The translations under genes were made by a program, and so were the position numbers. Of a stretch of 64,000 nt of DNA, positions 7,555 through 60,881 are shown in pieces. Each line of letters begins with the position of its first letter. Position 1 is the first letter of the stretch. The stretch lies in the IMG/VR virus record IMGVR_UViG_3300024239_000011, positions 248,001-312,000 of that record; one strand, given 5' to 3'. The notes under the pieces are model-generated. The model had not been told where the DNA came from. It saw only the letters and a program-made list of their open reading frames with translations, and made no database searches.

Positions 7555-7865
7555 CAGTCAAAATCCTTCATTGCATCCGCACGCTGCGCTTCCCAGAAAT
7601 TCGTGATTGCTGTGGTATTACTGCGTTGCGCCGCGAGTAGCTGTTCAAATTCGGTAACCCAATCAAGAAACCCATCAACTTCGTGTGGCTCTACGATTTC
7701 TGCGGCATATTCACGCATGTGACCCATGAACTCTGCGCACAATTCCGCTGGGATCATGGTCAGATCGATAACGAATCGGTTAAAGTCGATATCACCGTAT
7801 TGGTCTTGGTGAACCACGATTTGATAAACGTTTTCATCCCCTTCGGGAATTACATTTATGGTCAT
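7554..7865 (-). CDS. Hypothetical protein
   Basis: ORF overlapping the folD stop (ATGA). Confidence 0.65.
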   Translation of the reverse strand: MTINVIPEGDENVYQIVVHQDQYGDIDFNRFVIDLTMIPAELCAEFMGHMREYAAEIVEPHEVDGFLDWVTEFEQLLAAQRSNTTAITNFWEAQRADAMKDFD

Positions 7866-8752: not shown

Positions 8753-8840
8753 ACTGTGCGACCTTTCGGTTTGATCCGAAAGAGTACCAAACTGGCAAAA
8801 CATGGAGCAATTTTATTCATCATGTTTTGCCAGTTGGTTT

Positions 8841-41600: not shown

Positions 41601-44600
41601 GTGGGGGCAACCCCAAGGAACAATTGCTGTTCGATAACATTAAATTCGGTGATCTCAGTGACCGGTTGAGTGCCAGCTTGTGTCCAAACGCGAATATTTG
41701 GAGTTGCTGCCGGAAGTTTGGTCAATGTAAATTCACCCACGCCAACCGACACAAACGTATCGATGTTTTCCACATTGGTACCACCAGTAGAGAATGATGT
41801 GATCTTGATGACCGCACCCTTCGGCGGGGCAATACCCAATTCAACTACACCAGTGTCCCAGTGCAAGTAATACTGATCAGCACGTACCGCAGTATCGCTG
41901 CTAAACAATGGATCACCGGTCATTGGGTTGCGCGAAACCATTTCAAGCATCATGTTCTCGCCGTCCAGCCCGACCGTGACAAATACCGTTTCGCGGCTTG
42001 ATGGCTTTTGTCGCAGTTCAAAGTGCGTCGTAACATCATCAGCTTCGTAACGCGCCGATACAACAGACGGCGCACCAGCGGTGGCTTCGGTGTATACGGT
42101 GATGCCTAGGCTATCCGCCGTCCGCGTTGCTATCAGTTCTTGTGGACGATTTTCATCCATATAAGGGTTGGTCATGGCAGGTTTGCCCTGTAATTCGATG
42201 CGGACTTCCGTACCTTGCACAACACTTTCATCGAAAATGACATGCCATGTGCCAGCTATATTTTCGAGATGATAACCATCTAGTCTACGGCGTCCGTTGA
42301 CATACACACGTGCATGCCAATTTAGGTCATCCGCACTACCGATAACGCCTACAACAGGCGCCCCATCAAGTTGGAAATCTTGTTGCCCGTCGAGGGCTTC
42401 AAAGGTTTTGGACGGACCCGCCAGGAAGAAACCACCATCAACAATTACATCATCAAACCCGCTGGTAGAAGCCGGGGCAGTAAACGTGCCTCCCATTATG
42501 TTCATATCGTAGTAACGAGTTGATTTCTTCTCGCTCATGGTTGTTTCTACACCATCTACAATATCATTGGTGACAACCGCAACCGTGATTAGATCACCGT
42601 GATTAGGAAGTGCGTTGAACCTTACTTTCCACAGGTCTTCTGTTGTATTGTAATAGAAATCATATGCATCGGAAAGTTGAACTATGCCGTTGTATTCAAC
42701 AACCACTACATCGCCGTCCATCTTGTCGCGAATGCTATCGAAGATATGGTCGCCCCATCCAAGGGAGTTGTCCATTCCATCCTGCCAATATGTGACAGGG
42801 ACTTCATCTTGACCGTTGTACACGAAATTCATCACTGGAACATGGTTGCCCACATCTTCAGAGAACTTGGTGTCCAACAGATCGCCACCATCCATGCGGG
42901 TACCCTTGAAGTTGATATCCAAGAGTTCTCGCATATCTTTCGCAGGCATACCAGGGGTTGGGCGATAGTAAAGCATGATGCGCTCAGCCTGGGTCAACAA
43001 ATTCGGGTCCATGGTATTGTCGTATGGAACCGTAATATTGTCTCCTTTCTCATTAACCAGGGTCAACACATCATCCCGGTACGTGAGTAGGTTCATCGGT
43101 ATGTTGTCACTACCAAAGATAATGTCACTTGGAAGTGACGCTTTGATTTCGATAGTGTTGGCATCAACATACTTCATAACCTTATATGCGCCCACCATGG
43201 TCGTTTGCGAACGACGACGAATGTAAATGGTCTGTCCATCCTTAGGCGTTTCATTAATACGCAGACGTACCCCTGGATCGGTCTTATAGGTGATCATTAG
43301 TTGATCACCGGATTTTGGTGTTGGACTGATCATCACAATTTGCCCATTACCATACATAAACGTGTACAAAGGATCGGCATTTGTTACACGCGGCGTTCCG
43401 TTGCGCGGAATAATCGCGTCAGGTGTAATCAACTCCCAATTAGATTGATCGGTTGCAAAATCCACGCTGGTATGCGAGGTGGTACACACAAAAACTGATC
43501 CGCTGTGTTTAGCCAAATCATTGACCACATACACCTTTTCCGCTGCCCATGCCTTAACTCCACGTAAATTGCGCTTTACTTTTACGCTAATAGTGGATTC
43601 GTGATATGGTATGTTTTTAAGTGCAATTGTACCGGTGCTTGTCCCACGAATAACGATATCTTCGCGTTGTTCCATCGAGACAATTTCATAGTCAGGTGTG
43701 TAGGTTTTTGCATCATTATCTCGTGAGATTTCTAACGCATCACCATCGGTGTAATAATTTGCCGTTGTTGCCCAATCAAGTAGACGACCATCCACGTAGA
43801 CTTCGAGATCATGTTCATCTACCCGGAACGGCAATTCAAACAGCTTCGTGTGTCCATCACCAGTCAGCACTACTTCTGGAATTGGCTGGGGGATAACCAC
43901 ATAAGCGGCAATCTGGGGGATTGCATCGCTCCAATGTTTTAGTTTTTCGCCGTCAAAATCACCAGTGGAAACATACGATTTGATGCACAAGTAGTTCTTT
44001 GTGCGCCAACGGATAATATCCCCAACCACATACGAAATATTAGCGTCATATGCAGACGGATTCATATCATAATGCGGTGCCACCACATTGTGGTTGGCTG
44101 GGGTTTTAACAATGACTCGGTTGGATGCCCCAGGTTTTAGGCTGGCAATGCGTGTTGGAATTGGGTGGTTGGGTGAACGCAAATACACAACTTTCCAATG
44201 ATCTTGGTTTAGACCATCGTAGTTATGGAACCACACACGATCACCAAGACGATGCGCACGCTTGGTGGTCGATTCCTCACGTTGACCATAGTGTTCACGG
44301 TACAACTTCAACAGAGCTTGCTCACCATCCACGTACCAATCAATCCATTTTACACGGTCAAAGTGAATCGTAGTCTTCATCGAGCGTACCGGATAATGGT
44401 CGTCCGCGATTTTCTGGAAGTTTTCGTACCAATCCTTGTGATGTCGGCTGTTACGAAAATCCGTGGCCGTATATGGATCAGCAATAGTGTACGTACCATC
44501 CCCATTCCATACCACGTCGATTACTGCGTGATCCTTAATGGTACGATCCAATGGGAATACTGGCTTATCAAAGTCGGTAACACGGGCATGACCGGTTTCC

Positions 44601-47600
44601 ATCGGGAGAATCTTCGACAATGTAAAATCGCGGATTTTCGAGTGGTACGGCTTGACTTCGTTGATGTATCCAATAATTGAGTCGGTCTTGTCTTTACGCA
44701 ACACCGGTTCTTGAATCAACGGCTCGTTGATACCCTTGATGAACAGAAACGATGTTTTGAATGCCCAATCGACCATCCGGTGTTCGGTATGAGCGTAATG
44801 TACCATAGCAAAGAACAGGGCATTGATTTCACCCTTGGACAGTAACCCTGGTATATCAGCATCACCCATCAATGCTTTCAGCATAGCCTTGAACTCAAGG
44901 CTACCATCACGGAGGCGGACAGTCTCCCAATATGCGTTCAAATCAGTTGGATGATTGTCCTTAATGATTTGGCGCCGACTTTCGTCGTAGAACCGATCAC
45001 TCAGCTTAATAGTACCATTCTTGTAGGCTACCATTTTCCAACGACCGAAGGCTTCACCATCAACCTTGCCCTGGTATTCCTGCCAGTACCAGAGGTCAAT
45101 GTCCTTTTTGTCAATCCGGATCAGATCGCCTGCTGAGAAACCAACCTCACGGTCGTGGATATCGCGTTCAACTTCACTTGGGAATACATAACGCGGGATG
45201 TTCAGCTTCGAATAACCAGTATCATACCAGTCAACGGTAGACCAGAAATCAATAGTTTTATAATGCTGAACTGCATCGCAAGACCAACGACCGGCAACGG
45301 TCGGATCGTAACTCCACAGAGACCAGAAGCCATAGGTTGAAGTATTACCACGAACCAGAACTCGGGTACCACGTTCTAGAACGAAGTCAGGGTCGATTTC
45401 CTTGGCATTGCGTTCGTCAAATGAGTCAACTTCCATGTGGTAGTCTAAATCACCAACTACCTCAAACCAATTGTTGTTGTCCACGCCAACCACTGCGTTC
45501 GAAACACACTGTATCCACTTGGTGCCACGATTGTCATTACCACGACGAACATAGATATTAGCCCCTTCCGGTAGGTGGCTACCGGCGGCACAATCAGTGG
45601 CGCGAACGAATACCTTGTCGTTTTCGTGGTAAACGTAGATGCCGTTCTCCGTGGCATCTATCTGGTTCTTCACCAGTACGCGGTTGCCCTCCCGGACAAA
45701 CACACGGTCGATGGTACCAGGGAATGTACCGCCAGTTAAATCAACGTTGCCGTCAATCGTCGCGGTGGCCAAATCGACATCAATCTTCGCAAGCAGACCT
45801 ATACTTGAACCAACATGCTTCTGCGCTACTAATGCCCGTGGAGATTTTTCAGTGAACGTCAGCAAACCTTCATCGGACGATTGAAGATACGTAAGATCAC
45901 CTTGCATGACCGGGCGCTTGGTCAGCATGGTATTCACTCGCTCTACAATGATGCGACGTGCCATGTAGCGGTCATTGAACCATGACTGGCGCGGACGGAA
46001 GAGGTTGCCATAACGTTCCACCGTGGACAGGCTCAGGTCGGGAACGTCCATGTATTCGACGTTGAAGCCAACCAACGAGTCGGTCATCTTTCGCCACAAT
46101 AATGGATCGGGGTATGACCGGTCATCACCTTCGCGCATCAACACCCATTCACGGTGAACGTTGTCTTCGCGGTCGGTACGACGATAGTTAACCTGAACAA
46201 TACTGTTCTCATCGTTGAGCAGATAATCAACACCTGAAATGATTGTCGCATCTGGTGAGATTGGTGCGAACCATGGCATATCAAATGTCGATGGGTTCTC
46301 AATGAACTTAGCAACCTGAGTGGTCGTCAATTTGCGCCATTCAACCGGGGGAACTGTTGCCTTGTTTTTGACCCAGAAATAGTATACGGTTTTATAATCA
46401 CCGGTAGCCGGATCATATTCGGTGCGCTCACACCATGCCGGGTTGTTGGCATCCTTTACTGATCCAGTTGGTTTGGCGTCAAATGCTTCGATTGCCTTAC
46501 CCTTGTTGATTTCGACTTGACGTGCCCATTCGGTGGGAGGAACCGTTGAACGGGTCCACTCGTACACATCAATCGTGGCACGGGGCGCCAAACGACCCCA
46601 CACGTACTTGCGATACTTGTTATCACTAATCTCGTAGTCGAGGAACTTGACGGTACTCAAATCCCACCACAGGCGATGTTCTTCTCCACCACCCCAGGCA
46701 ATTTCCGGATTCATACGATGGTATTTGGGGTCGCCATTATTGTATACTGCCGGATCAATTTCCAGTTTGTACCAAATTTCTGCATCAGCCGTGCCCGGTA
46801 TGATGCCCTTGGCAGGATCATACAGGTGAACGTACTGCTGTACCTCAGTGGTTTTCTTGTCATAGATTACCGCATTGAAAATACGATTGTTATCTACTTT
46901 TGCTGGTTGGATACGAACCGGTATGGTATCGAAATTATTACCGTTGTATTGATATACTGCATACTTACCATTACCCGCATCATCTACATAGGCAAGGTCA
47001 CCTGACAACCACTGCCCGGTATTCAGCGTTGCATTGCGTGCAGATATGGTTGCAAAACGGCGTGGGAAGAATTTCATCACGGCAGGACCAGTGGTTCCGC
47101 CCTGCGAAGTCCAATCAAACATGTCGTCAATTACCACCGGAATGATGAATTCCGTAGTAGATGGTACTGACTTCACATAATGAATACCACGTACATCCGG
47201 TATCGACTTGGTATCTGTAGTGATTACGATCAAGTCGTCAATAGCAAGATTATGGGTGTCCGAAACTGTGATTTTAGTTTCAGTATCCGACACATATTCG
47301 ACCTTGGTAACATTAACAACAGCCGTACCGAGGTTCTGAACAGAGAACATCTGCCATTCGTCATTGATGTCGTATACCCAAATTTTTTCACCCGTCACAA
47401 AGTTCTTACCCTTCTGAAGGATTTCGTAGTGAACACTGGACAAGTCGGTAAGATCAAGGGCATAATGATCAGATTCATCCACACGGGCATAACCAGCAAC
47501 CGGAAGATCACCCTCACGGGTTTCATTGATTGCGCGTAGCGGGAAAATGGTTTCCATTTCCCGGTTTGGTTTCACCACCCACCGGTTCTCGGTTTCTACC

Positions 47601-50600
47601 AACCGTCCAGCGTCAATGTCTTCCACGATAGTTGAAGCACTGGTGTGTGCGGACAACACCGAGTAATACCGGTTGTCGAATTTAACCTCTTCATATTTTG
47701 AATAGAAGGTATTCGGTGCCCATGACTGAACTTCAAGTGGAATATTGACTACATCATCGTTCGGCAGATCAGCAATGGTACTGTTGTTGGCGAAAAACTC
47801 AACCAACTGCGGACGTGACCGTACTTCTCGTTGACGCAACAAGAATTCAAAGGTCAATTTATTGGTAACGCCACCATAGTTTCCGACGCGGAATGCCCAT
47901 TCATCAAAGAATTTAACTTCTTCCGCGTCCAGCACAAAGAAACTACGCAAGAGTTTTTGCATAGCATCAGAGGTGCCTTTCTGACGCATGGCACCCTGGA
48001 AGAACTGGAACTCGGTCTTAGGATCAAGCAACAGATCATTCATATAAGCGCGACCCTGGTAGCCCACTAAGTGCAGCGAGTAATTACGCAGGGTTGGATT
48101 ATCTACCCCATCTTCAATACCAAAGAAATGACGGAAGTCATCCACGGTCTTTTCGAAGTTTGGGATCAAAACATTGTCGGTCACAATAAAACCGGGGGCA
48201 TCCATGCGCCCAACCCAATCCATTGACCGCGTTGCCGACAGACGGAGACGTGGCTGACGCAGGTTGAATACCGGATCATAGATCAGATCATTGAAAATTG
48301 TCACGTTGTCGAAAATGATAACGTGTTCAACTTCACTGACAAACAAACGGGTCAGATAAATCAATTGGTCGTTACGTGACGTGACCACCAATTCATTACC
48401 GACGCGCGAGACATCGGTTTCGCGCGGTTGTATCATAAAGCCATCGCGATTAAGCATCGAATATGCACCACGCACAATGCGTTCGATATTCTGTACTTCG
48501 CCATGGTCGGTGACGAATTTGACATATTTTGATGCCGGTGACAGTGCAATAGTATTACCCGGTGCCCAACGTCCGAGAGACCAGAACAAAAAGTCCTTGC
48601 CAACCGAGACCCAATCAATCGTCTCTTCGTTGGCAAAATCCATTTGTTCGAAAACCCATCCGTCTTTCTTCAGCCAGCGTCCATAATCCACAAGGAAGTC
48701 AAAAACATCTTGTGGATTGTAAAATTCAGTACCATACGGTACATTAAGAATGTTTCCGGCACGGTTTGCATCAAGATAATGAATTACCGTGATGCCTTTA
48801 TTATTCGGACCAAGATCAAGTGGTTTCCAGAAGGAATCCCCAAACTCTTCACCGGAACGATGGTTGTCAATGCACTTGTATTCAACTCCCTGATTAACAA
48901 CGATATCCCCTGCCGTGTACACAACATGAGCTTGCCATGGACGACCAGTTTTTTCGGTCTTACCAACGGCAACCTTGGTCTTGCGACCATTGATATCACT
49001 TGGAATGGTGCGGAATACTGGATCAACCACATCGTAACCAAACACCTTCCATCCTCGACCGGTCCACTGCACGATTACGCCGCTATAGGTGTGATCGGCA
49101 ATGCTCGGGCTGCGATATAGGAAGACGTTGATGTTTTCGCTCGGGACCAAACCGAAGTTATCGGCACGAGCCTGTAAGGTGTTCTGATCCACAAACCCCG
49201 CCATTTTGTGACCAAGACGCACGTCAATACCACGAATGACCTTACCGAACGCCTCGGTAATATCCTGACCACGGCTTTTGATGTAATCACAAACCCATTG
49301 TTGTACCCCGGTCACGCGATAACGCTGCGGAAGATCAACCTCAGAGGATTCTTCGCCATGCAAGGTCAAATAGCTGTGCGGACGACGGGCACGAATATCA
49401 TCGTACACCCACTGACGGGTTTGCTTCTGGTTGCGATAAATTTCCTTCAGGCGGACGGTATCCCAACAGTATTCGATCAGTCGCACCGGCTTGATCAAAT
49501 ATCCGCTCATGGTAGCAGCGAACGGGAAGTTCGGGCTGCGGCGCCATGCGGTTTCTGTCGGTCCATGATCCCCGAATTTCCATTCCTGCTGTGCTTCAAA
49601 CGCAGTCGGAAGGCGCGAACAAATACCAGCAGATACCGGATCAATCAAATTACCAAGATCATCTACCGGAATGTACTGCGACATTCCGGGACGCTGGTAC
49701 TCTGAATAGGTACCAGCGGTCGGTCCACGAGCGATAATGCCGTTTTCAAGATCGCCCCACAACTTGGTATTGCCGCGCGTATATGGAGCCACGCCGTAAT
49801 GGGCATCCCACCAATCCGGCTTTTGTGACATACCAAGCATTTCCCATGGGTGTGTATGGGGGCGGTCGGTATCAAAATAGTACAAATAGATGCCACGCCA
49901 ATGCCCTGGCAACGGCTGCCCGTCACGATCAGGAACCGCTCCGTAATTCCATGTGAATGGATTGTCGGCAATCCACGTCTGGTTTTCACGATAATTGACG
50001 CGAGACATCGTTGCCCACCGTTCAAAGGCAGGACGGATAATGCTGTTCCATTCAGCCCATGAATAATCGGTCAAATAGCCTGCACCACCCTCACTCGCGG
50101 GGCGCCGGAATTTACCAGATACGTACCGACGATGGTCGAAAATCCGTTCAGCCCCTCGTTGGGCAAAACGCAGCGACGAATTGTTGTAAACGCGCTTCTC
50201 AAATTCGAGTACAACGCTGTTCAGGAACTCATATTCCCCGGTGAAGCTTTCGATATACGAACCATCATGTGCCTGAATAAACTGACGTGGGTTCAGCAGC
50301 GTCTCATCCACTACCATCCCAGGACGGAAAATAGCATAGATGCCCATTTGAGAGGGCGACGGTGGCACGTAGGTGAAATACCCATCATACCGGATCAGAC
50401 GAATTTTATCGGTTTCATTGAGGCTGAAATCGCCAAGCAGACGTATTTCGTCTACGTCAGTCTCGTAGTCCCACCCACGATCCAATAATTTCGGAAATTC
50501 GCCGTTCTTTTCCAAATAGACGAATGATTTTTCGATGTTCTCGCGGGTGCCTGGAATCAGATATTCGTTGACACCGGTAAAGCAGTCCACCGAAACTTCG

Positions 50601-53600
50601 AAAACCTTGAAGTTATCACCCGCCGGGCACATTGTGGAGTATGCAAAGGGGAAATCAACAGTCTTACCAACATTGATTTCTTCCAATGCCCGATTGACGA
50701 AATCTTCAGGGGAAATCAGTCGATCAATACCCTGCTCATAGATATCCACAATCTTACGGATAAATTTGTTACGGAAACGGCTGAACTCATGTTCCGCATA
50801 CTGTATCGACAACATGAAGTCAATGTTTTGATCTGATGCCATAATCATAGTCTTCAACATCGGCGCTCGATGTTGAAGAATTACGCGACCAAACGAACGA
50901 TCCTTTGGGGTGTCACGGTAGTTGTTTACCCCGTACACGTTCCCGTTAAAATTCTTCTGACTCTTCAATATCGTCGTGAAGTGATCAAAGAATTCATTAT
51001 AACTGATTTCACTTACTTCACGAGAATCCGGGTTGCCCTGAAGATTGAACGGAACCTCATAGACGCCAACCAGATTATCTGGCGCTCGCCGCACATAGGT
51101 GTAAATGGTCACAAGGTTATTCTTCGCAACACCGTTACGCAAACTGACAACACCATCAGATACCGAATAATCAGTGTACAAATTGAGTTCTTCGGCATTA
51201 ACCATTACAGAAATGGCATCCGGATCGATCAATTCATCAACGGTTAAGTTGTGCGAAATTGCGAAATCAGTTTGACCTTCGGTAGAGATGTAGGTGTGTT
51301 TGATGCGCTGACGGCTTGGCATATCCACCAAGTACCAGTCGTTTGAATAATCAAAACTGCCATCAATTTTCTGGGTACGATGGAAGTAATACCCCGTAAT
51401 CTCATCCTTATCCAGGGCATAATTGAACCGTTCGGTGGTTAAGTAATTCTTGTAAATGGGATGACCACTTGCGCTGTGTTTGACGCGCATTTCAAGAATT
51501 GTGTCCATTGGAACGCCCGCCGATGCTTCATCGGTGAATCCAAAAACGCGGCTACCGGCGAACGTGGATTCTGGGTAACGCCCCGGATCATCCAAGGCAA
51601 CGCCGTCGATGTCGTAGAGTGCAAATAATGGGGGCTGGTTCGAGTGGGTCTTGCGCTGAACTTCAATCCAGTTGTCGCCATCGAAGCGGAAATCACGGTC
51701 AAGGTTTGAGAACCCGTATCGAGAACGAATGGTGTCGCCAACCGAAGGAAGACCACTTTCATTCTCGCCAACAATGACCGGCGATAGTACCACACGTCCA
51801 GTGGATTTGATACCAGATACACGGTAAATGCGATTGTTGTATTCTGGGTTTGGATCATTGGTGATCAAGATGGTCATACCATCGCGGATCAAAATGCCCT
51901 TCTCGGTATCCCAGATAATCGCGGTGATCTTGGTTTGTGCAGTCCCGGTAGGTTTACGAATGCTTAGTGTGTTATTGGCGTTGATACGATAATCGAAACC
52001 AATACGCACTGGACGATCATTGAAATAGAATACCGCACGCAACGCTTCGTCCGGAGTTAACCCAAGACCCATCGTCGGATTGGATAGATCAATGGTGTAC
52101 GATCCCGCATCGACAAACCAAGTCGAAGTCGGATCATTGGCAGTATCTACCCAGTTTTTACCACGTGCTGATACATCAAGCAGCAAGGGTGCAATACCAA
52201 ACTCACGTAACGGGGGCTGATTGTGAATAAAATCAGGATTGGAAGCAGCGAACCCATTGATCTGAGTGAACGTTAATACGTCTTCCTTAACATCCACATC
52301 ACCAACACGACGTTGACCATACTGATACAATTCCAAATTACGCTTGAACTCAATGATTGGACGCTCAGCGCGAATCGCGTCGTCCGTACCACGGTCGGCA
52401 CGAGCAACGACATCCTCGTGGAACCACCGGTTCCCGCGACTCCATGGATTGCCGTCAATACAACCACGCTCCATCACAAGATAATCTGGACGGGCACTGG
52501 TTGTCGCCAAAGCAACACTACCCCAACCAAGACCCTGCTCGGCATCCCACCCAAATGGTTCAATGCGCAGATTGATTTCTTTTCCAACCCCGGCAACTTT
52601 ATACATACAGGTCTTGTAGGTATACTTGGTGACTTGTTCGAAACCATATGTAACAAAGATGATCAGCATGTTGTTGGTCAGCGCAATCGGCTCGGACGGC
52701 GACGCATACGATGCTTCCCATTTGTCGTCATAGGGGTCAGTCACATCCGGTGGGGTCATCGGATCAAATGGACGCCACGGGTTGTCCTGATTTGCTCGCT
52801 TGTAATGACCACTAAAATCAAAATATTTCTTACCGTTAATGGTCGTGATGAAGTTTTGAATATCAGTATTCGGGTCTTCAATGAAAAATACGTAGGGTGT
52901 GACCGTATAACGACCAAGATCATCCCAGCGATGACCACCTTCACCCTCTGGTTCTTCAATCAGGAATGCAGATACACCAACTCCTTCAATAATGAAAGTC
53001 TTGTTGTTGAACTGATCGCTATTCACGTCGCGGCGAATAGTCAAACGCATTCCACTGGTGAGGGTTAGCGGTTCTACCGTTCCGTCGTGCGGCTCAGTGA
53101 TGCTGTCATCAGACGGCAGCCGATATTTTCCCGTGAATATTAATGGATAATCCGTATTCCCGACCAAAGTTCGTTCCACATCAGTCAAACTGAGAATTTC
53201 AATCGGTTTCGGTCCACGCGGCATCCAATAATACCGTTTGAAATTCATAAGCTTATCGATGTCTACCGGCGGACACCATGAATAAAACTCATTGTCGAAA
53301 AGACGGTTATGGTCGTTTATCAAACCGCCATGAAAACGCAGATGGTTCAATAGATCATCGTAGAACAAAGCATGCGTCACCGAAGCAGTTTCCGTGGCGC
53401 GGCTGATTGCTATGGGTTCCATCGAATAATCTTGGCGTGTCTTTGATGGCTCCTGAATGTAGAAATCCTTTTCAGGGTCAGTATACAATGGATAGCGTCC
53501 AATGTATCCACTGACTACTTCCGATGCCTGTGGCTGGAATAGATGATCTACAGTGGCGCCAAAAAACCGCTGAAGGGTCTGGCTTTGAAGAACCGAAGGC

Positions 53601-53632
53601 AAATGCTTGATTACTTGTCTTTTCTCGACCAT
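38666..53632 (-). CDS. Giant (4988 aa) baseplate/virion structural protein
   Basis: Uninterrupted 15 kb ORF; YINEVKPYHSKIR; YFDTDRPH..PWEM; four W/Y-x4-Y-x2-(G/N)D CBM5/12-like repeats; RVLVKNQ...ENGIY fibre motif; TAAATA at 53664-53669. Confidence 0.85.
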   Translation of the reverse strand: MVEKRQVIKHLPSVLQSQTLQRFFGATVDHLFQPQASEVVSGYIGRYPLYTDPEKDFYIQEPSKTRQDYSMEPIAISRATETASVTHALFYDDLLNHLRFHGGLINDHNRLFDNEFYSWCPPVDIDKLMNFKRYYWMPRGPKPIEILSLTDVERTLVGNTDYPLIFTGKYRLPSDDSITEPHDGTVEPLTLTSGMRLTIRRDVNSDQFNNKTFIIEGVGVSAFLIEEPEGEGGHRWDDLGRYTVTPYVFFIEDPNTDIQNFITTINGKKYFDFSGHYKRANQDNPWRPFDPMTPPDVTDPYDDKWEASYASPSEPIALTNNMLIIFVTYGFEQVTKYTYKTCMYKVAGVGKEINLRIEPFGWDAEQGLGWGSVALATTSARPDYLVMERGCIDGNPWSRGNRWFHEDVVARADRGTDDAIRAERPIIEFKRNLELYQYGQRRVGDVDVKEDVLTFTQINGFAASNPDFIHNQPPLREFGIAPLLLDVSARGKNWVDTANDPTSTWFVDAGSYTIDLSNPTMGLGLTPDEALRAVFYFNDRPVRIGFDYRINANNTLSIRKPTGTAQTKITAIIWDTEKGILIRDGMTILITNDPNPEYNNRIYRVSGIKSTGRVVLSPVIVGENESGLPSVGDTIRSRYGFSNLDRDFRFDGDNWIEVQRKTHSNQPPLFALYDIDGVALDDPGRYPESTFAGSRVFGFTDEASAGVPMDTILEMRVKHSASGHPIYKNYLTTERFNYALDKDEITGYYFHRTQKIDGSFDYSNDWYLVDMPSRQRIKHTYISTEGQTDFAISHNLTVDELIDPDAISVMVNAEELNLYTDYSVSDGVVSLRNGVAKNNLVTIYTYVRRAPDNLVGVYEVPFNLQGNPDSREVSEISYNEFFDHFTTILKSQKNFNGNVYGVNNYRDTPKDRSFGRVILQHRAPMLKTMIMASDQNIDFMLSIQYAEHEFSRFRNKFIRKIVDIYEQGIDRLISPEDFVNRALEEINVGKTVDFPFAYSTMCPAGDNFKVFEVSVDCFTGVNEYLIPGTRENIEKSFVYLEKNGEFPKLLDRGWDYETDVDEIRLLGDFSLNETDKIRLIRYDGYFTYVPPSPSQMGIYAIFRPGMVVDETLLNPRQFIQAHDGSYIESFTGEYEFLNSVVLEFEKRVYNNSSLRFAQRGAERIFDHRRYVSGKFRRPASEGGAGYLTDYSWAEWNSIIRPAFERWATMSRVNYRENQTWIADNPFTWNYGAVPDRDGQPLPGHWRGIYLYYFDTDRPHTHPWEMLGMSQKPDWWDAHYGVAPYTRGNTKLWGDLENGIIARGPTAGTYSEYQRPGMSQYIPVDDLGNLIDPVSAGICSRLPTAFEAQQEWKFGDHGPTETAWRRSPNFPFAATMSGYLIKPVRLIEYCWDTVRLKEIYRNQKQTRQWVYDDIRARRPHSYLTLHGEESSEVDLPQRYRVTGVQQWVCDYIKSRGQDITEAFGKVIRGIDVRLGHKMAGFVDQNTLQARADNFGLVPSENINVFLYRSPSIADHTYSGVIVQWTGRGWKVFGYDVVDPVFRTIPSDINGRKTKVAVGKTEKTGRPWQAHVVYTAGDIVVNQGVEYKCIDNHRSGEEFGDSFWKPLDLGPNNKGITVIHYLDANRAGNILNVPYGTEFYNPQDVFDFLVDYGRWLKKDGWVFEQMDFANEETIDWVSVGKDFLFWSLGRWAPGNTIALSPASKYVKFVTDHGEVQNIERIVRGAYSMLNRDGFMIQPRETDVSRVGNELVVTSRNDQLIYLTRLFVSEVEHVIIFDNVTIFNDLIYDPVFNLRQPRLRLSATRSMDWVGRMDAPGFIVTDNVLIPNFEKTVDDFRHFFGIEDGVDNPTLRNYSLHLVGYQGRAYMNDLLLDPKTEFQFFQGAMRQKGTSDAMQKLLRSFFVLDAEEVKFFDEWAFRVGNYGGVTNKLTFEFLLRQREVRSRPQLVEFFANNSTIADLPNDDVVNIPLEVQSWAPNTFYSKYEEVKFDNRYYSVLSAHTSASTIVEDIDAGRLVETENRWVVKPNREMETIFPLRAINETREGDLPVAGYARVDESDHYALDLTDLSSVHYEILQKGKNFVTGEKIWVYDINDEWQMFSVQNLGTAVVNVTKVEYVSDTETKITVSDTHNLAIDDLIVITTDTKSIPDVRGIHYVKSVPSTTEFIIPVVIDDMFDWTSQGGTTGPAVMKFFPRRFATISARNATLNTGQWLSGDLAYVDDAGNGKYAVYQYNGNNFDTIPVRIQPAKVDNNRIFNAVIYDKKTTEVQQYVHLYDPAKGIIPGTADAEIWYKLEIDPAVYNNGDPKYHRMNPEIAWGGGEEHRLWWDLSTVKFLDYEISDNKYRKYVWGRLAPRATIDVYEWTRSTVPPTEWARQVEINKGKAIEAFDAKPTGSVKDANNPAWCERTEYDPATGDYKTVYYFWVKNKATVPPVEWRKLTTTQVAKFIENPSTFDMPWFAPISPDATIISGVDYLLNDENSIVQVNYRRTDREDNVHREWVLMREGDDRSYPDPLLWRKMTDSLVGFNVEYMDVPDLSLSTVERYGNLFRPRQSWFNDRYMARRIIVERVNTMLTKRPVMQGDLTYLQSSDEGLLTFTEKSPRALVAQKHVGSSIGLLAKIDVDLATATIDGNVDLTGGTFPGTIDRVFVREGNRVLVKNQIDATENGIYVYHENDKVFVRATDCAAGSHLPEGANIYVRRGNDNRGTKWIQCVSNAVVGVDNNNWFEVVGDLDYHMEVDSFDERNAKEIDPDFVLERGTRVLVRGNTSTYGFWSLWSYDPTVAGRWSCDAVQHYKTIDFWSTVDWYDTGYSKLNIPRYVFPSEVERDIHDREVGFSAGDLIRIDKKDIDLWYWQEYQGKVDGEAFGRWKMVAYKNGTIKLSDRFYDESRRQIIKDNHPTDLNAYWETVRLRDGSLEFKAMLKALMGDADIPGLLSKGEINALFFAMVHYAHTEHRMVDWAFKTSFLFIKGINEPLIQEPVLRKDKTDSIIGYINEVKPYHSKIRDFTLSKILPMETGHARVTDFDKPVFPLDRTIKDHAVIDVVWNGDGTYTIADPYTATDFRNSRHHKDWYENFQKIADDHYPVRSMKTTIHFDRVKWIDWYVDGEQALLKLYREHYGQREESTTKRAHRLGDRVWFHNYDGLNQDHWKVVYLRSPNHPIPTRIASLKPGASNRVIVKTPANHNVVAPHYDMNPSAYDANISYVVGDIIRWRTKNYLCIKSYVSTGDFDGEKLKHWSDAIPQIAAYVVIPQPIPEVVLTGDGHTKLFELPFRVDEHDLEVYVDGRLLDWATTANYYTDGDALEISRDNDAKTYTPDYEIVSMEQREDIVIRGTSTGTIALKNIPYHESTISVKVKRNLRGVKAWAAEKVYVVNDLAKHSGSVFVCTTSHTSVDFATDQSNWELITPDAIIPRNGTPRVTNADPLYTFMYGNGQIVMISPTPKSGDQLMITYKTDPGVRLRINETPKDGQTIYIRRRSQTTMVGAYKVMKYVDANTIEIKASLPSDIIFGSDNIPMNLLTYRDDVLTLVNEKGDNITVPYDNTMDPNLLTQAERIMLYYRPTPGMPAKDMRELLDINFKGTRMDGGDLLDTKFSEDVGNHVPVMNFVYNGQDEVPVTYWQDGMDNSLGWGDHIFDSIRDKMDGDVVVVEYNGIVQLSDAYDFYYNTTEDLWKVRFNALPNHGDLITVAVVTNDIVDGVETTMSEKKSTRYYDMNIMGGTFTAPASTSGFDDVIVDGGFFLAGPSKTFEALDGQQDFQLDGAPVVGVIGSADDLNWHARVYVNGRRRLDGYHLENIAGTWHVIFDESVVQGTEVRIELQGKPAMTNPYMDENRPQELIATRTADSLGITVYTEATAGAPSVVSARYEADDVTTHFELRQKPSSRETVFVTVGLDGENMMLEMVSRNPMTGDPLFSSDTAVRADQYYLHWDTGVVELGIAPPKGAVIKITSFSTGGTNVENIDTFVSVGVGEFTLTKLPAATPNIRVWTQAGTQPVTEITEFNVIEQQLFLGVAPTEGTLVTVTYEIEDAASNDFQNNQNQRIVEIARFSPTNGIMPPLMLKNPEGITYSQSHISVVRDGEVLSLGDYSVIKHDTGTHEVVLTDGEPGEVAIVAFNTPNIVKVRTHQYQYTAGEPIILTDVPSPTVPHHGAVLVYKKITEADLICENGQPAGTSIGDPLVADDVGRGIRLMPPTTRYFLGDGGCFAYRFERPITSVADTQIWIGQNTTPLVPVYPAGTVGGDATGTVDVGSFTIPQRFRGPIDANDALPCDGDDDLKAGDYFVIEGYFGFDDGGYDGVPFDNTPKPEGTNVRNWLGVAFAGTWATKGMNRPNPNQTNQNEFGFEDGDMILYLGRGRWSRMITSAGMRNTGNYAASLARAVEEATREIHFFDAPSKNADICFVWYEHGKYDYDIKNGNELHLYGPTFAGLTLEDGDWITVTTFSDDEAMGIRTEVFTATVNGKYPLTRVPSDANSLWVNTNGRRNIYGMDYTIQNSTIGWDNLSWDAYFGWDDNRSRPLVSFNNRHSGDWRVVVTTFTNRSAQQPVGFRLFKNSQDEWEYLRIADAHKTKLNTALDFDDRHMQVVDAKVFVTNNEAAILSRKDVTMYATTATLVVNIDLLSSTPVPPVHVVVSDNAAGGAADGIITHADIAMAINSNADLRAVTISAAITEHGHLIIRRVDGQDFSISDSASDALATAFFGNNVVSSVRPLLTPEAVFVDGERIEYMGIDVVNNRLLNIRRGTGGTSSGIRNIYRNHMEVSDGLKEEFILPGWFDPMNDDAVMIKAEYVDHGKVMVKEYRKESYTVTRNDTDEVVVKFPYAPTEGWVLTFSATVSNWEISGASYPAGTIVVDGGAPQYIPGGYRWEGLLDKGFQGQLDAIPVGTKGVTQADAGRWYQLSRAYDAELLDIRVIIEHEGFVDPETGETRTIEEQLIRYQDWFIDGTILKFRRNIPAPTNGQNNIILHLRSYRGLQYSNSAMAQFLREKPATHYWGN

Positions 53633-58052: not shown

Positions 58053-58637
58053 ATGAATAAGAAGCAAACAATTGCAAAATGCGAAGTTGATGATTTCTTT
58101 GATAAGGGCGGTGCTACCGCCATGGGTCACATCTTCATTCATGACCCGGAAACCGGTGAAGTATTTGTGAATAAACGTAATGCGATTCACTACGAATCAT
58201 TTTCTATAGCCATCATCAAGGCATTGGCCCAAAAACAAGACGGGCACATTTACACGATGGCATTTGGTAATGGAGCCTCGGCGGTATCTGGTATTGGAAC
58301 GATCACTTACTTGACCCCAAATGTGGTTGGGTATGGAGCAGAATTGTATAACCAGACTTACGCTAAGAACATTCTCGAAGACAACATGGAAGTTCGTCAT
58401 ACCCCTGGTGAACTTTATACCGATCTTGTTATTCGAGTAACATTGGGGTTTGGTGAACCCTCAGGACAACGTGCTTTTGATGACGCGATTAGTCTTGAAG
58501 ACGCTTATGTTTTTGATGAAATTGCGTTGAAAGCATTTGACGGCACTTTACTTACACATGTGATTTTTCACCCTGTGCAAAAAAGTTTGAATAGACAAAT
58601 CGAATTAGTTTATACCATCCGCGTCGCGATGGTTTGA
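58053..58637 (+). CDS. Baseplate/tail structural protein
   Basis: NAIHYE, MAFGNG, FDEIALK, LLTHVIFHPVQKSLNRQIE..YT; TAAATA at 58004 and 58015. Confidence 0.75.
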   Translation: MNKKQTIAKCEVDDFFDKGGATAMGHIFIHDPETGEVFVNKRNAIHYESFSIAIIKALAQKQDGHIYTMAFGNGASAVSGIGTITYLTPNVVGYGAELYNQTYAKNILEDNMEVRHTPGELYTDLVIRVTLGFGEPSGQRAFDDAISLEDAYVFDEIALKAFDGTLLTHVIFHPVQKSLNRQIELVYTIRVAMV

Positions 58638-58649
58638 TGTGCGGATACT

Positions 58650-58682
58650 AATGAAAAACGGCGGGAACCCGCCGTTTTTCAT
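58650..58682. terminator. Bidirectional terminator
   Basis: ATGAAAAACGGCGG-GAAC-CCGCCGTTTTTCAT between convergent genes. Confidence 0.8.
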
Positions 58683-58723: not shown

Positions 58724-59740
58724 TTAATACACCAATTCGTCTTGTTCGTGACCTTCGTAAATGATAATCTGCCCGGATACCGCCAGTTCCTTAGCAATAA
58801 CGACGATGAGCGACTGCGCCTGATCCACGTCGCGTAGGCGTACTGGTCCCATTGCGTCCATGTCTTCCTTAAGCATTTTTGCCGCACGTTCGGACATGTT
58901 CTTCATGAACAAGTCTTTGATGCCATCAGAGGCACCCTTGAGCGCCAGGGACAGTCGGTCTTTTTCCACCTGACGCAGTAATGTTTGGATACCAGCGGCA
59001 TCCAAGCGCACCAAATCCTCGAAGGTGAACATCAGCGCCTTGATCTTTTCCGCCGATTCGCGGTTGCGTTCTTCGAGCGAGGACATCAAGCGGTTTTCGG
59101 TGGTGCGGTCGAGGTTGTTGAAAATATCTGCCATCAATTCGTGGGTATCGCGGCGTTGGGTGCGGGCGAGGTTGCCCATAAATTCGGTACGCAAGATATC
59201 TTCAACCTGATCCAACACTTCCTTCTGTACCGCCTCCATACGCAGCATGCGCATCACCACTTCCATGGCGAAATTTTCCGGCAGTAGTGCCAGCACGCGG
59301 GCGGCGTGGTCGGGCTTGATCTTGGCCAGCACGACGGCGACGGTCTGCGGGTATTCGTTCTTCAGGTAATTGGCCAGCACCGCTTCGTTGACGTTGCCCA
59401 GCTTGTCCCACATGGTACGACCAGCGGGACCGCGAATCTCTTCCATGATTCGGCTGGCTTGATCGCTGGGTAATGCCTTAGTGAGAAGTCGTTCCGTGCT
59501 TTCGATGGAACCGACTAGCGTACCAGTGGTCAAAAGGTTGTCTGCAAATTCTGCATACAGAGTTTCGATCAATTCAGGCGTAACGGTGCCTAGGTTCGCC
59601 ATGATCTGCGACACTTCCTTGATTTCGTCATCATCAAGGCGGTGCAGAATTTGCGACCCGTGATCTTCCCCGAGTGCCATGAGGAAGATGGCGGCTTTTT
59701 GTGGACCCGTCAGGCAACGATAGTCGGTCTTTATCGGCAT
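58724..59740 (-). CDS. fliG: Flagellar motor switch protein FliG, alphaproteobacterial type
   Basis: [54 protein letters not shown]; full length; TAAATA at 59769-59774. Confidence 0.97.
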
Positions 59741-59818: not shown

Positions 59819-60082
59819 TCAGCCCAAAATGGCGACTGGAAGCACTCCATGGTATTGCGGATACCGATGCCCCAGCACCGTTTTGGGAATGAATACGGTG
59901 GACACTTCACCGCGATGAGCCGCGATGATCATATTCACCTGAAAGAACTGGTTGGGGTGTGACGTCATCCAGGCAGTTTCCGCTTTCTTATGCGCATCCA
60001 GGGCAGATTCCGCCGTCACGGTGATTGCATTCACTGGGTCGCCGTTGCCGTATGGGGGTGTAATAACGGTGAACTTGGTCAT
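59819..60082 (-). CDS. Hypothetical protein
   Basis: GAGGG RBS; lies between ate and fliG. Confidence 0.6.
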   Translation of the reverse strand: MTKFTVITPPYGNGDPVNAITVTAESALDAHKKAETAWMTSHPNQFFQVNMIIAAHRGEVSTVFIPKTVLGHRYPQYHGVLPVAILG

Positions 60083-60084
60083 GA

Positions 60085-60807
60085 TCAGTCACCCTCGTTT
60101 TCCAATGGTTGCCACCCGTTCGAGCCGCAGACTTCGAGCGGTTTGAAGCGGGTTTTATATTTCATGGTTTGTGCCCCTTTTACCCAAAATCCCAGATAGA
60201 AATACGGAAGGTTTTGGCGTTTGAGTTCTTCAATTACCCAGAGGATCGCAAAAGTACCTAGCGACCGTTTATCCATGGACGGCTCGAAGAACTGGTAGTT
60301 TCCAGAAAACCCGTCATTCAATCGGTCGATCAGGGTCACTCCGATAAGATGCCCATTGGCATCCCGGAATTCGTATAGGAACGTTTCAATCGGGCTGATC
60401 TCAACCATCGACCGATAGTCCTCAAAACTCATCAACGCCATGTCACCGCCAGTGTGTCGCGTTTCCTGATAGCGTGTGAACAATCCGTATTGTTCCTTGG
60501 TCGCAACATTCTTCACGCGAGTAACAATCAAATCGGTATTTGTCTTGATAATTTTGCGCATGGTGCGGTCAGGAGCAAACCCATCAACAACAATACGCAC
60601 AGATTTACACTCCGAGCAGCCCGTGCAGGTTGGAGTATAGATGATGTTATGACTGCGCCGATAGTTTGACGCTGCCATATCACTATAAAATTTCTCGGCA
60701 TTTTTCAGGCTGGAAATTTCAGTCACGGTTTTACGTTCAGCCCGTGCCGGAAGATATGGGCACGGCAGCGGTGACGTTGTGAAGTAATATGGAGATTTTC
60801 TCGTCAT
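60085..60807 (-). CDS. ate: Bacterial ATE/Bpt family aminoacyl-tRNA--protein transferase
   Basis: PCPYLP..ERK, YRRS...Y.P.C..C..C.SVRI, Y...RH..G.M, SLGTF.IL, YLGFWV, M.YK.RF.P.E. Confidence 0.93.
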   Translation of the reverse strand: MTRKSPYYFTTSPLPCPYLPARAERKTVTEISSLKNAEKFYSDMAASNYRRSHNIIYTPTCTGCSECKSVRIVVDGFAPDRTMRKIIKTNTDLIVTRVKNVATKEQYGLFTRYQETRHTGGDMALMSFEDYRSMVEISPIETFLYEFRDANGHLIGVTLIDRLNDGFSGNYQFFEPSMDKRSLGTFAILWVIEELKRQNLPYFYLGFWVKGAQTMKYKTRFKPLEVCGSNGWQPLENEGD

Positions 60808-60881
60808 TGAACACCTGTGATACACCACCCGCCATGTTAGCGTTCTGGTTGTGCATTGTCAATGATCGCCTAAATACGATC

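What the first reader, a model, noticed from the sequence alone, without database searches (positions are those of the whole stretch)
60085..60807. Phage-encoded ATE/Bpt N-degron aminoacyl-transferase
Seen: a complete ATE-family protein with its Cys cluster. Known: bacterial Bpt adds Leu to N-terminal Asp/Glu, routing proteins to ClpS-ClpAP. Inference: the phage may redirect host proteolysis (defence proteins, regulators) or consume charged tRNA. It lies co-directional with fliG in a small host-takeover cluster.
Basis: partly seen in the sequence, partly recalled or inferred. Interest (0 to 1): 0.68.

Follow-up and report, generated by a model that had tools for sequence, protein, structure and literature searches.

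The report
Huge phage carries a Bpt aminoacyl-transferase
A huge bacteriophage (at least 543 kb) carries an intact, long-resident copy of the bacterial Bpt enzyme, which tags proteins for ClpS-ClpAP degradation, and the same phage also encodes ClpA and ClpP, so it probably steers protein breakdown in its host.

Summary
Window 60807..60085 (- strand) encodes a 240-aa protein with ATE_N and ATE_C domains. It scores above the curated NCBIfam cut-off, has an ATE1-like predicted fold, and keeps all four metal-site cysteines.

It lies in real phage DNA, next to tail-fibre and baseplate genes of an Atu_ph07/Rak2-like huge phage. It is the first gene of a three-gene unit, bpt-orf87-fliG. That unit recurs with the same gene order on the five other contigs whose DNA I could read, from four other metagenome samples; the database reports at least 10 carrier contigs.

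The gene came from a Magnetospirillum-like alphaproteobacterium (best identity 52-58%) and has been in the phage a long time: its GC content matches the phage and its tree branch is about ten times the median. It still keeps 55 of 63 near-invariant columns and every mapped acceptor-site and catalytic residue.

The amino-acid donor pocket is uncharged, as in Bpt and unlike Ate1, so this is not an arginyltransferase. All four pocket residues differ from the cellular consensus.

The same phage record encodes ClpA, with ClpS-docking residues conserved, and ClpP. It has no ClpS and no Aat.

I found no genuine ATE homologue in GenBank phages, PHROGs or IMG/VR. Activity, substrates and timing are untested. 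It is a new phage-borne member of a known enzyme family.

The parts
60085..60807 (-). bpt: 240-aa ATE_N+ATE_C aminoacyl-tRNA-protein transferase (Bpt type), stop codon included
60834..60862 (-). sigma-70-like promoter candidate, TTGACA-17 nt-TAACAT, about 27 nt upstream of the start codon
   Evidence: It matches 10 of 12 consensus positions, but the number of such sites in the region (2) does not exceed shuffles (mean 4.1), so it is consistent with a promoter, not evidence for one
60812..60816 (-). AGGTG Shine-Dalgarno, 4 nt before the ATG at 60807
   Evidence: Read from the sequence. orf87 and fliG have similar GGTG-type sites
59819..60082 (-). orf87: 87-aa ORFan. Its ATG lies 2 nt after the bpt stop, suggesting translational coupling
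   Evidence: No Pfam, PHROG or PADLOC hit. Only an identical copy among 5.8 billion proteins. The protein atlas gives only weak similarity to small viral hypothetical proteins
58724..59740 (-). fliG: full-length flagellar motor switch protein homologue (338 aa)
   Evidence: FliG_N, FliG_M and FliG_C. TIGR00207 273.8 bits against a cut-off of 226.7. 79-80% identical to Magnetospirillum FliG
58657..58676 (.). GC-rich hairpin with T-runs on both strands, between the end of fliG and the convergent gene 58053..58637; a probable bidirectional terminator

Best explanation
This is a functional, phage-adapted Bpt-type aminoacyl-tRNA-protein transferase. An ancestor of this huge phage acquired it long ago from a Magnetospirillum-like (Rhodospirillales) bacterium, which is probably the host lineage. 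SHOWN: the domain architecture and fold; the 4-Cys site; the equivalents of klAte1 R80, Y25, Y87 and K304; an uncharged donor pocket; a conserved operon in independent assemblies; and ClpA and ClpP genes in the same phage record. INFERRED: the enzyme takes a hydrophobic amino acid, most likely Leu, from aminoacyl-tRNA and adds it to N-terminal Asp or Glu exposed by endoproteolysis. The new N-terminus is bound by host ClpS, which docks on the N-domain of ClpA (phage or host copy) and delivers the protein to ClpP. The phage would thereby keep up or raise flux through the Leu/N-degron pathway during infection, removing cleaved host or phage proteins. The targets are unknown.
For: Family membership: Pfam and NCBIfam hits and an ATE1-like fold. 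Residue mapping used the profile alignment to klAte1 and the mutagenesis data in PMC9351520. It gives R50=R80, Y18=Y25, Y57=Y87, K218=K304 and C16/C61/C64/C67; each of these is conserved in 106 or 107 of the 107 cellular sequences compared and kept in the phage. The donor pocket G169/A187/V191/F203 has no acidic residue, whereas Ate1 has Glu277 at the third position. The phage keeps 55 of 63 columns that are at least 95% conserved. Natural variants show 7 synonymous-only codons against 3 amino-acid-changing codons, over about 160 synonymous and 560 nonsynonymous sites. The ORF is intact and the bpt-orf87-fliG order is the same on the five other contigs read, from four other samples; the database reports at least 10 carrier contigs. 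Gene GC is 47.6% and GC3 53.5%, like the phage (48.7% GC) and unlike cellular bpt (66% GC, 89% GC3). The phage protein sits inside a supported (SH-aLRT 97) clade of 80 Rhodospirillales-type Bpt sequences. Pathway partners in the same record: ClpA-like, 760 aa (TIGR02639 834 bits, Clp_N plus two AAA modules, IGF loop). Its E30/E35/T86/R91 equal E. coli ClpA E23/E28/T81/R86, the ClpS contacts. ClpP scores NF001368 312 bits against a cut-off of 249 and has the Ser/His/Asp motifs. Complex prediction of the phage ClpA N-domain with Magnetospirillum ClpS scored 0.72 with best control 0.00; 51 of 78 solved complexes and 2 of 108 mismatched pairs reach that mark; the runs agree in at least 88% of contacts; partner pLDDT is at least 91; a like complex has been solved, so the pass may be from memory. 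Host-like genomes encode ClpS. The phage has 10 tRNA-Leu genes.
Against: The terminal branch is very long (2.6 against a median of 0.24). Eight near-invariant columns are changed, three of them non-conservatively (G48N, V170N, K214T). All four donor-pocket residues differ from the cellular consensus, and V191 and F203 occur in none of 107 cellular sequences, so activity or specificity may have changed. ClpS and Aat were not found in the 543-kb record. bpt, clpP and clpA lie about 60 and 125 kb apart, so their coupling is inferred only. ClpA is common in this phage group without Bpt, so ClpA need not exist for Bpt's sake. Leu as donor has been demonstrated only for Vibrio vulnificus Bpt (as cited in PMC9351520 and PMC12493166), not for any alphaproteobacterial enzyme. 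Nine of the ten variable codons cluster in codons 16-34, so the synonymous-to-nonsynonymous ratio may reflect one recombination patch.
Confidence: 0.6

Rival explanations
1. Neofunctionalised transferase. The phage enzyme still uses aminoacyl-tRNA, but its remodelled donor pocket selects a different amino acid, or it acts on a particular phage or host target (for example a flagellar or virion protein). The modification would then not be primarily a degradation signal.
For: All four donor-pocket positions differ from the cellular consensus (A/M,V/L/V changed to G/A/V/F). V191 and F203 are unique among 107 cellular sequences, and the neighbouring V170 is Asn. The terminal branch is ten times the median. 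The gene is co-transcribed with a phage-specific ORFan and a FliG copy.
Against: The acceptor-pocket residues for acidic N-termini are unchanged. The pocket remains small and hydrophobic, which is compatible with Leu. Phe, Trp and Tyr would also be ClpS ligands, so the outcome could be the same. The pocket mapping rests on a sequence alignment to a yeast enzyme at about 18% identity.
Confidence: 0.2
2. Passenger or decaying gene: a host gene picked up by a huge phage, with no role in infection.
For: Only one narrow phage lineage carries it; nothing lies between 99% and 58% identity among 5.8 billion proteins. It sits 2.2 kb from a mosaic junction where a 98.6%-identical relative carries different genes. 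It has more changes at conserved columns than almost any cellular sequence (8, against a median of 0).
Against: Full GC amelioration implies long residence, yet the frame is intact and all mapped functional residues are kept. The Shine-Dalgarno site and operon structure are in order. The gene is intact in all the other contigs read, from four other samples, with more synonymous than nonsynonymous change.
Confidence: 0.1
3. The enzyme acts as a sink for charged tRNA, depleting Leu-tRNA to throttle host translation.
For: None beyond the fact that the enzyme consumes aminoacyl-tRNA.
Against: The reaction is stoichiometric with acceptor N-termini, which are scarce. The phage invests in 66 tRNA genes, including 10 tRNA-Leu, and an IleRS, which points to sustaining translation.
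Confidence: 0.03
4. Artefact: bacterial DNA mis-assembled or mis-binned into a viral contig.
For: The only other 'phage' records with an ATE gene are mislabelled bacterial contigs ('Acinetobacter phage MD-2021a', which carry minD, ftsK, aat and tufA).
Against: Here the gene is flanked by phage structural genes within a few hundred bases. It has phage-like GC. It is at most 58% identical to any cellular protein. The same junctions occur in independent assemblies from ENA, JGI and Logan.
Confidence: 0.02

Closest known systems
Bacterial Bpt (aspartate/glutamate leucyltransferase), characterised in Vibrio vulnificus; nearest sequences are Bpt of Magnetospirillum, Phaeospirillum and Telmatospirillum (Rhodospirillales)
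   Same: Same length (about 240 aa) and ATE_N+ATE_C architecture. Same C-P-Y and C-x2-C-x2-C cysteines and R-R-S-H acceptor motif. Same Y-K catalytic motif and uncharged donor pocket. 52-58% identity, and it falls inside that clade on the tree.
   Different: It is encoded by a phage. GC content is ameliorated to the phage's. The branch is about ten times longer. The donor pocket is G/A/V/F instead of A/(M,V)/L/V. Eight near-invariant columns are changed. In cells bpt sits among housekeeping genes (and where it lies next to aat); here it heads an operon with an ORFan and fliG.
Eukaryotic Ate1 arginyltransferase (PDB 7WFX/7WG1, 8E3S, 7TIF, 8TZV)
   Same: Same fold (TMq 0.65-0.75). Same acceptor-site Arg and Tyr residues and catalytic Lys, and a 4-Cys metal site at the same place.
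   Different: Ate1 is twice as long. Its Cys motif is CxxC plus CC. Its donor pocket is Ser/Ser/Glu/Tyr, with the Glu essential for Arg; the phage protein has Val at that position. It is therefore not an arginyltransferase, despite the NCBIfam product name.
Aat / LFTR (leucyl/phenylalanyl-tRNA-protein transferase)
   Same: It is the other bacterial N-degron aminoacyl-transferase, also uses aminoacyl-tRNA, and feeds ClpS-ClpAP.
   Different: It belongs to a different Pfam family (PF03588) and accepts N-terminal Arg, Lys or Met. It was not found in the phage record.
Clp components already reported in jumbo phages (ClpP, ClpS, ClpA, ClpX; Iyer et al. 2021, PMC7824862)
   Same: The same idea that jumbo phages redirect host Clp proteolysis. 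This phage's ClpA is 42-50% identical to those of Atu_ph07, Phosso and PA5oct.
   Different: That survey of 224 jumbo phages mentions no aminoacyl-transferase ('arginyl' occurs 0 times). This phage has Bpt, ClpA and ClpP but no ClpS in the record examined. It therefore adds the degron-making step rather than the degron-reading step.

Membership tests
ATE/Bpt aminoacyl-tRNA-protein transferases (Pfam ATE_N + ATE_C) | Both domains present, full length, in order | tested here: met
   ATE_N covers 2-72 of 72 positions (63.2 bits); ATE_C covers 1-120 of 122 (128.4 bits)
ATE/Bpt aminoacyl-tRNA-protein transferases (Pfam ATE_N + ATE_C) | Curated equivalog score | tested here: met
   NF002343 scores 290.1 bits against a cut-off of 267. 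Three sibling models fall just below or at their cut-offs
ATE/Bpt aminoacyl-tRNA-protein transferases (Pfam ATE_N + ATE_C) | Four-cysteine metal (Zn or Fe-S) site in ATE_N | tested here: met
   C16, C61, C64 and C67 are present, and invariant in 107 cellular Bpt sequences. Metal binding itself was not tested, and the model confidence is low in this region
ATE/Bpt aminoacyl-tRNA-protein transferases (Pfam ATE_N + ATE_C) | Acceptor pocket for acidic N-termini (klAte1 R80, Y25, Y87) and conserved active-site Lys (K304) | tested here: met
   R50, Y18, Y57 and K218, by profile alignment to 7WG1 with the 4-residue tag offset checked on the C-P motif
ATE/Bpt aminoacyl-tRNA-protein transferases (Pfam ATE_N + ATE_C) | GNAT-containing ATE fold | tested here: met
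   The top 32 Foldseek matches are all ATE1 chains, followed by MprF and FemX aminoacyl-transferases
Bpt subtype (hydrophobic donor, Leu) as opposed to Ate1 subtype (Arg) | Donor pocket without the acidic residue (klAte1 E277); hydrophobic residues as in Vv Bpt A168/A185/Q189/L201 | tested here: met
   The phage has G169/A187/V191/F203, all uncharged. However, none equals the commonest cellular residue
Bpt subtype (hydrophobic donor, Leu) as opposed to Ate1 subtype (Arg) | Leu transfer to N-terminal Asp/Glu | not testable with these tools
   Needs an enzyme assay
Bacterial Leu/N-degron pathway as a phage-borne set | N-recognin ClpS | tested here: not met
   PF02617 was not found in the 543-kb record, and orf87 shows no ClpS likeness. 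ClpS is present in three host-like genomes. The record is a fragment of a larger genome, so absence from the phage is not shown
Bacterial Leu/N-degron pathway as a phage-borne set | ClpA with an N-domain able to dock ClpS, and a ClpP-docking loop | tested here: met
   Clp_N plus AAA_2, with ClpA the best model. E30/E35/T86/R91 are conserved. An I-G-F loop is present. Complex score 0.72 against best control 0.00; the pass may be from memory of the solved E. coli complex
Bacterial Leu/N-degron pathway as a phage-borne set | ClpP peptidase with catalytic triad | tested here: met
   PF00574 267 bits; NF001368 312 bits against a cut-off of 249; Ser, His and Asp motifs present
Bacterial Leu/N-degron pathway as a phage-borne set | Aat (L/F-transferase) | tested here: not met
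   PF03588 was not found in the record

The most novel reading that the evidence does not exclude
The phage runs its own re-tuned N-degron system. Its Bpt, with a remodelled donor pocket, would attach a residue chosen for the phage ClpA-ClpP machine. The bpt-orf87-fliG operon would act together on one target, for example removing or replacing parts of the host flagellar switch to change motility or block superinfection. This would be the first viral use of tRNA-dependent N-terminal tagging and would give the first natural substrates of any bacterial-type Bpt.
Probability: 0.12. Interest if true: 0.8.

Novelty: new member of a known kind. Interest (0 to 1): 0.55.

Why it matters
Bpt has been known since 2006, yet to my knowledge no natural substrate has been assigned to it in any bacterium. 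To my knowledge, and in the collections searched here, no virus has been reported to encode an aminoacyl-tRNA-protein transferase.

Jumbo phages are already known to carry ClpS, ClpP, ClpA or ClpX. A phage that carries the degron-making enzyme together with ClpA and ClpP suggests that tRNA-dependent N-terminal tagging is another lever by which viruses control host proteolysis.

It also offers a compact system in which Bpt substrates could be found. The four natural substitutions in the donor pocket are a ready-made test of what sets amino-acid specificity in this family.

Tried and rejected
Nothing can be said about transcription.

2. Survey of viruses.
- tblastn against 50,697 GenBank phage records gave only two hits. 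Both are bacterial contigs mislabelled 'Acinetobacter phage MD-2021a'.
- PHROGs has no family for the protein.
- Three pattern scans of IMG/VR with one protein and two alignments found no relative. These scans need exact peptide patterns and leave out the window's own record, so distant viral ATE genes could be missed.

3. orf87 as a hidden ClpS. There is no Pfam hit, it is an ORFan, and the atlas gives only small viral hypothetical proteins below the 0.9 lead threshold. I rejected the idea for lack of evidence.

4. Phage LeuRS. The PF13603 hit turned out to be an IleRS.

5. Defence or anti-defence annotation. There are no PADLOC hits in the operon or its neighbours. No Rfam family occurs in 57-62 kb.

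6. Literature. Searches combining Bpt, arginyltransferase, N-end rule and phage terms found no report of a phage-encoded ATE/Bpt. The original Bpt paper (Graciet et al. 2006) is not held, so it is cited only through PMC9351520 and PMC12493166.

7. The 869,618-bp ENA contig could not be searched because the record is not held.

8. The large representative protein search was not used. It carries no genomic context and could not show whether a hit is viral.

9. The tally of 126 of 201 alphaproteobacterial genomes with a Bpt match includes one unpublished genome (G043).

Full report
THE OBSERVATION

On the - strand of the window an open frame runs 60828..60085.

- Pfam finds ATE_N (E 2.8e-17) and ATE_C (E 2.9e-37), both matched end to end.
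- NCBIfam's equivalog NF002343 ('arginyltransferase', the name NCBI gives to bacterial Bpt) scores 290 bits against a cut-off of 267.
- An AlphaFold2 model built on 20 sequences (mean pLDDT 76.9) finds only ATE1 chains as its first 32 Foldseek matches. The best is human ATE1 at TMq 0.75. Other aminoacyl-tRNA transferases (MprF, FemX) follow.
All four are invariant in 107 cellular Bpt sequences.

THE PHAGE CONTEXT

The same window encodes a 1136-aa baseplate wedge protein (phrog_10646, 1233 bits), a baseplate hub with lysozyme and M15 peptidase domains, virion structural proteins and a homing endonuclease. The wedge protein is 38-43% identical to those of Agrobacterium phage Atu_ph07, Sinorhizobium phage Phosso, PA5oct and the Rak2-like phages.

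A tail-fibre-like gene starts 313 nt from the bpt start codon on the other strand.

The window is positions 248001-312000 of a single 543,035-bp IMG/VR virus contig with 48.7% GC and 66 tRNA genes, ten of them tRNA-Leu.

Assembly artefact or host contamination is excluded for three reasons:
- The gene has phage-like composition: GC 47.6% and GC3 53.5%, against 66% and 89% in cellular bpt.
- It is at most 58% identical to any cellular protein.
- The same gene order, with the same flanks where the contig reaches them, occurs on the five other contigs whose DNA I could read. These come from four other samples in ENA, JGI and Logan; the database reports at least 10 carrier contigs.

LOCAL ANATOMY

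bpt is the first of three co-directional genes.

- A TTGACA-17-TAACAT site lies at 60862-60834. An AGGTG Shine-Dalgarno lies 4 nt before the ATG.
- The ATG of an 87-aa ORF follows the bpt stop after 2 nt.
- After 78 nt comes a full-length fliG (FliG_N, FliG_M and FliG_C; TIGR00207 above cut-off).
- A GC-rich hairpin with T-runs on both strands at 58657-58676 separates fliG from a convergent gene.

The promoter match is only consistent with a promoter, because such sites are no more frequent here than in shuffled sequence. orf87 is an ORFan: no family hit, only identical copies among 5.8 billion proteins, and no ClpS likeness. There is no Rfam family in 57-62 kb.

ORIGIN AND AGE

The word-based search of 5.8 billion proteins returned one 99% cluster, which is the same phage lineage. 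After that came only proteins at 51-58% identity, of which those carrying an informative name are almost all Magnetospirillum or Rhodospirillales. The best of these (P0002, 58%) sits in an ordinary bacterial chromosome between motAB and parC/recO/era/rnc.

In an even sample of 201 alphaproteobacterial genomes, a Magnetospirillum genome (G001) was best at 55%; the next were 50% and below.

I built a maximum-likelihood tree of 108 sequences. It places the phage protein inside a supported clade (SH-aLRT 97) of 80 rows. The clade is almost entirely Rhodospirillales-type Bpt from Magnetospirillum, Telmatospirillum, Novispirillum and relatives. The phage's terminal branch is 2.6, against a median of 0.24, and long branches are placed with less certainty.

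FliG tells the same story for the donor lineage: it is 79-80% identical to Magnetospirillum FliG, and the same genomes rank first. However, bpt and fliG are on different contigs or about 1 Mb apart in the cellular genomes searched. fliG is also much less ameliorated (GC3 65%) than bpt (GC3 53.5%). The two genes were therefore captured separately, bpt earlier, and brought together in the phage.

IS THE ENZYME STILL AN ENZYME?

I mapped functional residues from the K. lactis Ate1 crystal-structure paper (PMC9351520) through a profile alignment to chain 7WG1. I checked the four-residue tag offset on the paper's Cys298-Pro299 motif.

- The acceptor-pocket Arg80 (essential; R80E is inactive) is phage R50.
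- Tyr25 is Y18, and Tyr87 is Y57.
- The conserved active-site Lys304 is K218.
- Each of these is conserved in 106 or 107 of the 107 cellular sequences compared, and all are retained in the phage.

Overall the phage keeps 55 of the 63 columns that are at least 95% conserved in cells. The eight changes are F8Y, L31I, L44M, G48N, F49Y, V170N, Y207F and K214T. That is more than almost any cellular sequence shows (median 0, maximum 8).

Among natural phage variants, seven codons vary synonymously only and three change the amino acid, over about 160 synonymous and 560 nonsynonymous sites. That gives a ratio near 0.15-0.2. Nine of the ten variable codons lie in codons 16-34, so one recombination patch could explain much of it.

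Long residence, an intact frame, retained functional residues and an orderly operon together argue for a working protein. They do not prove it.

WHICH AMINO ACID?

In Ate1 the pocket for the arginine of Arg-tRNA is Ser255/Ser273/Glu277/Tyr289, and Glu277 is essential. In V. vulnificus Bpt, which transfers Leu, the equivalents are Ala/Ala/Gln/Leu (PMC9351520).

In the 107 cellular sequences the four positions are mostly A, M or V, L and V. The phage has G169, A187, V191 and F203. There is no acidic residue, so the NCBIfam product name 'arginyltransferase' should not be read literally: this is the Bpt subtype.

All four positions depart from the commonest residue, however. V191 and F203 occur in none of the 107 cellular sequences, and the adjacent near-invariant Val170 is Asn. 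Leu remains the best guess, but a shifted donor preference is a real possibility. The mapping is by sequence to an enzyme about 18% identical, and no bacterial Bpt structure exists in the PDB.

THE REST OF THE PATHWAY

A search of the whole 543-kb record gave the following.

- ClpS (PF02617) and Aat (PF03588) were not found.
- A ClpP is present: PF00574 267 bits; NF001368 312 bits against a cut-off of 249; Ser, His and Asp motifs intact.
- A 760-aa ClpA-like protein is present. It has a Clp_N domain and two AAA modules, and ClpA is its best NCBIfam model (834 bits, below the equivalog cut-off of 993). It has an I-G-F ClpP-docking loop.

The four E. coli ClpA N-domain residues reported to contact ClpS are Glu23, Glu28, Thr81 and Arg86 (PMC12493166). 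They align with identical residues E30, E35, T86 and R91 of the phage protein. The Magnetospirillum ClpS has the matching E-x-x-E-x-K helix.

I ran a complex prediction of the phage ClpA N-domain with that ClpS.
- Score 0.72, with the best of three controls at 0.00.
- That mark is reached by 51 of 78 solved complexes and 2 of 108 mismatched pairs.
- The runs agree in at least 88% of contacts, and partner pLDDT is at least 91.
- The interface includes residues 31, 33-35 and 86-89.
- A like complex has been solved, so this shows likeness and may be from memory.

Three host-like genomes encode ClpS.

ClpA is common in this phage group: 42-50% identity in Atu_ph07, Phosso and PA5oct. The comparative study of 224 jumbo phages already lists phage ClpP, ClpS, ClpA and ClpX, but no aminoacyl-transferase (PMC7824862). 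bpt, clpP and clpA lie about 60 and 125 kb apart in the record, so their functional link is an inference.

MOST LIKELY MECHANISM

Shown: an intact Bpt-type transferase gene in a conserved phage operon, and ClpA and ClpP genes in the same genome.

Inferred:
- The enzyme adds Leu, or another hydrophobic residue, from aminoacyl-tRNA to N-terminal Asp or Glu created by proteolytic cleavage.
- Host ClpS reads the new N-terminus and hands the protein to ClpA-ClpP, whether phage or host copies.
- The phage thereby maintains or boosts this degradation route during infection.

What is degraded is unknown.

RARITY

- tblastn of the protein against 50,697 GenBank phage records gave only two hits. Both are bacterial contigs (minD, ftsK, aat, tufA) filed under a phage name.
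- PHROGs has no matching family.
- Three IMG/VR pattern scans found nothing beyond the window's own record, which is left out. Their sensitivity is limited to shared peptide patterns.
- Full-text searches found no report of a phage-encoded ATE/Bpt.

I therefore rate it a new, phage-borne member of a known enzyme family, not a new kind of system.

CAVEAT ON COMPLETENESS

Three independent assemblies continue identically for at least 7.7 kb beyond the right end of the 543-kb record, and that sequence does not match the record's other end. One of them is an 869,618-bp contig. On it the bpt operon lies near 480 kb and the record's end near 246 kb.

The record is thus a fragment. 'No ClpS, no Aat' holds only for the part examined. 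The larger contig is not held here.

LIMITS

There is no biochemistry. Residue mapping is by alignment. The tree places a long branch. The tally includes one unpublished genome (G043), from which nothing was used.

Noticed in passing
G000 right end (L128, L130:1-7726); ENA ERZ27245855:k141_178484: The 543-kb IMG/VR record, rated 100% complete by CheckV, is a fragment. Three independent assemblies extend identically past its right end; the extension carries TnpB/IS605, an M32 carboxypeptidase and hypothetical genes. One of the three is an 869,618-bp contig that would contain the whole record plus about 245 kb and about 81 kb. If that contig is all phage, it would exceed the largest phage genome known to me (735 kb).
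   Followed up: partly
window 58724-59740 (-): A full-length FliG (N, M and C domains) in a phage, 79-80% identical to Magnetospirillum FliG. It is less GC-ameliorated than bpt, so probably a later capture. Its function in a phage is unexplained.
   Followed up: partly
G000:C1:432992-435274 (-) and G000:C1:368680-369219 (-), outside the window: The phage encodes a ClpA-like unfoldase (760 aa) and a ClpP with an intact triad. A DUF2201 metallopeptidase/VWA protein lies just upstream of clpP. A reading frame near clpA ends with sequence that looks, by eye only, like the C-terminal part of DnaJ; no family search was run on it.
   Followed up: partly
L006:9973-15337 (related phage, ENA ERZ4201046 NODE_195), against window left of 56496: A 98.6%-identical relative diverges completely 2.2 kb beyond fliG. 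There it carries genes with faint or weak Pfam hits to Csf3, a CRISPR-associated (Cas6-like) protein and a DinG-type helicase, possibly a type IV CRISPR-Cas module. The window has different, unannotated ORFs at that place.
   Followed up: no
window 38666-53632 (-): A single 4988-aa open reading frame whose only Pfam hit is two CBM_5_12 carbohydrate-binding modules. It is presumably a giant fibre or surface protein.
   Followed up: no
G000:C1:77583-172508: 64 of the 66 tRNA genes lie on one strand within a 95-kb stretch. They include 10 tRNA-Leu covering all six Leu anticodon families, 4 tRNA-Arg, and one tRNA-like gene with a four-base anticodon loop call (ctta).
   Followed up: no
G000:C1:~529505-532336 (+) (L132): The phage encodes an isoleucyl-tRNA synthetase (TIGR00392, 739 bits against a cut-off of 621).
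   Followed up: partly
window 7862-8803 (-) and 8841-10580 (-): A FolD-type methylene-tetrahydrofolate dehydrogenase/cyclohydrolase lies next to a 579-aa homing endonuclease (phrog_3339).
   Followed up: no
phage database records CAKLQH020000030.1 and CAKLQF020000028.1: Records named 'Acinetobacter phage MD-2021a' are bacterial chromosome contigs (minD, minE, ftsK, trxB, aat, bpt, rimI, tufA). They will give false 'phage' hits for host genes.
   Followed up: yes
L003:7517-10726 (bacterial contig with the closest cellular Bpt): In this Rhodospirillales-like chromosome, bpt lies two genes downstream of motA-motB. This is a curious echo of the bpt-fliG pairing in the phage and is probably coincidence.
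   Followed up: no
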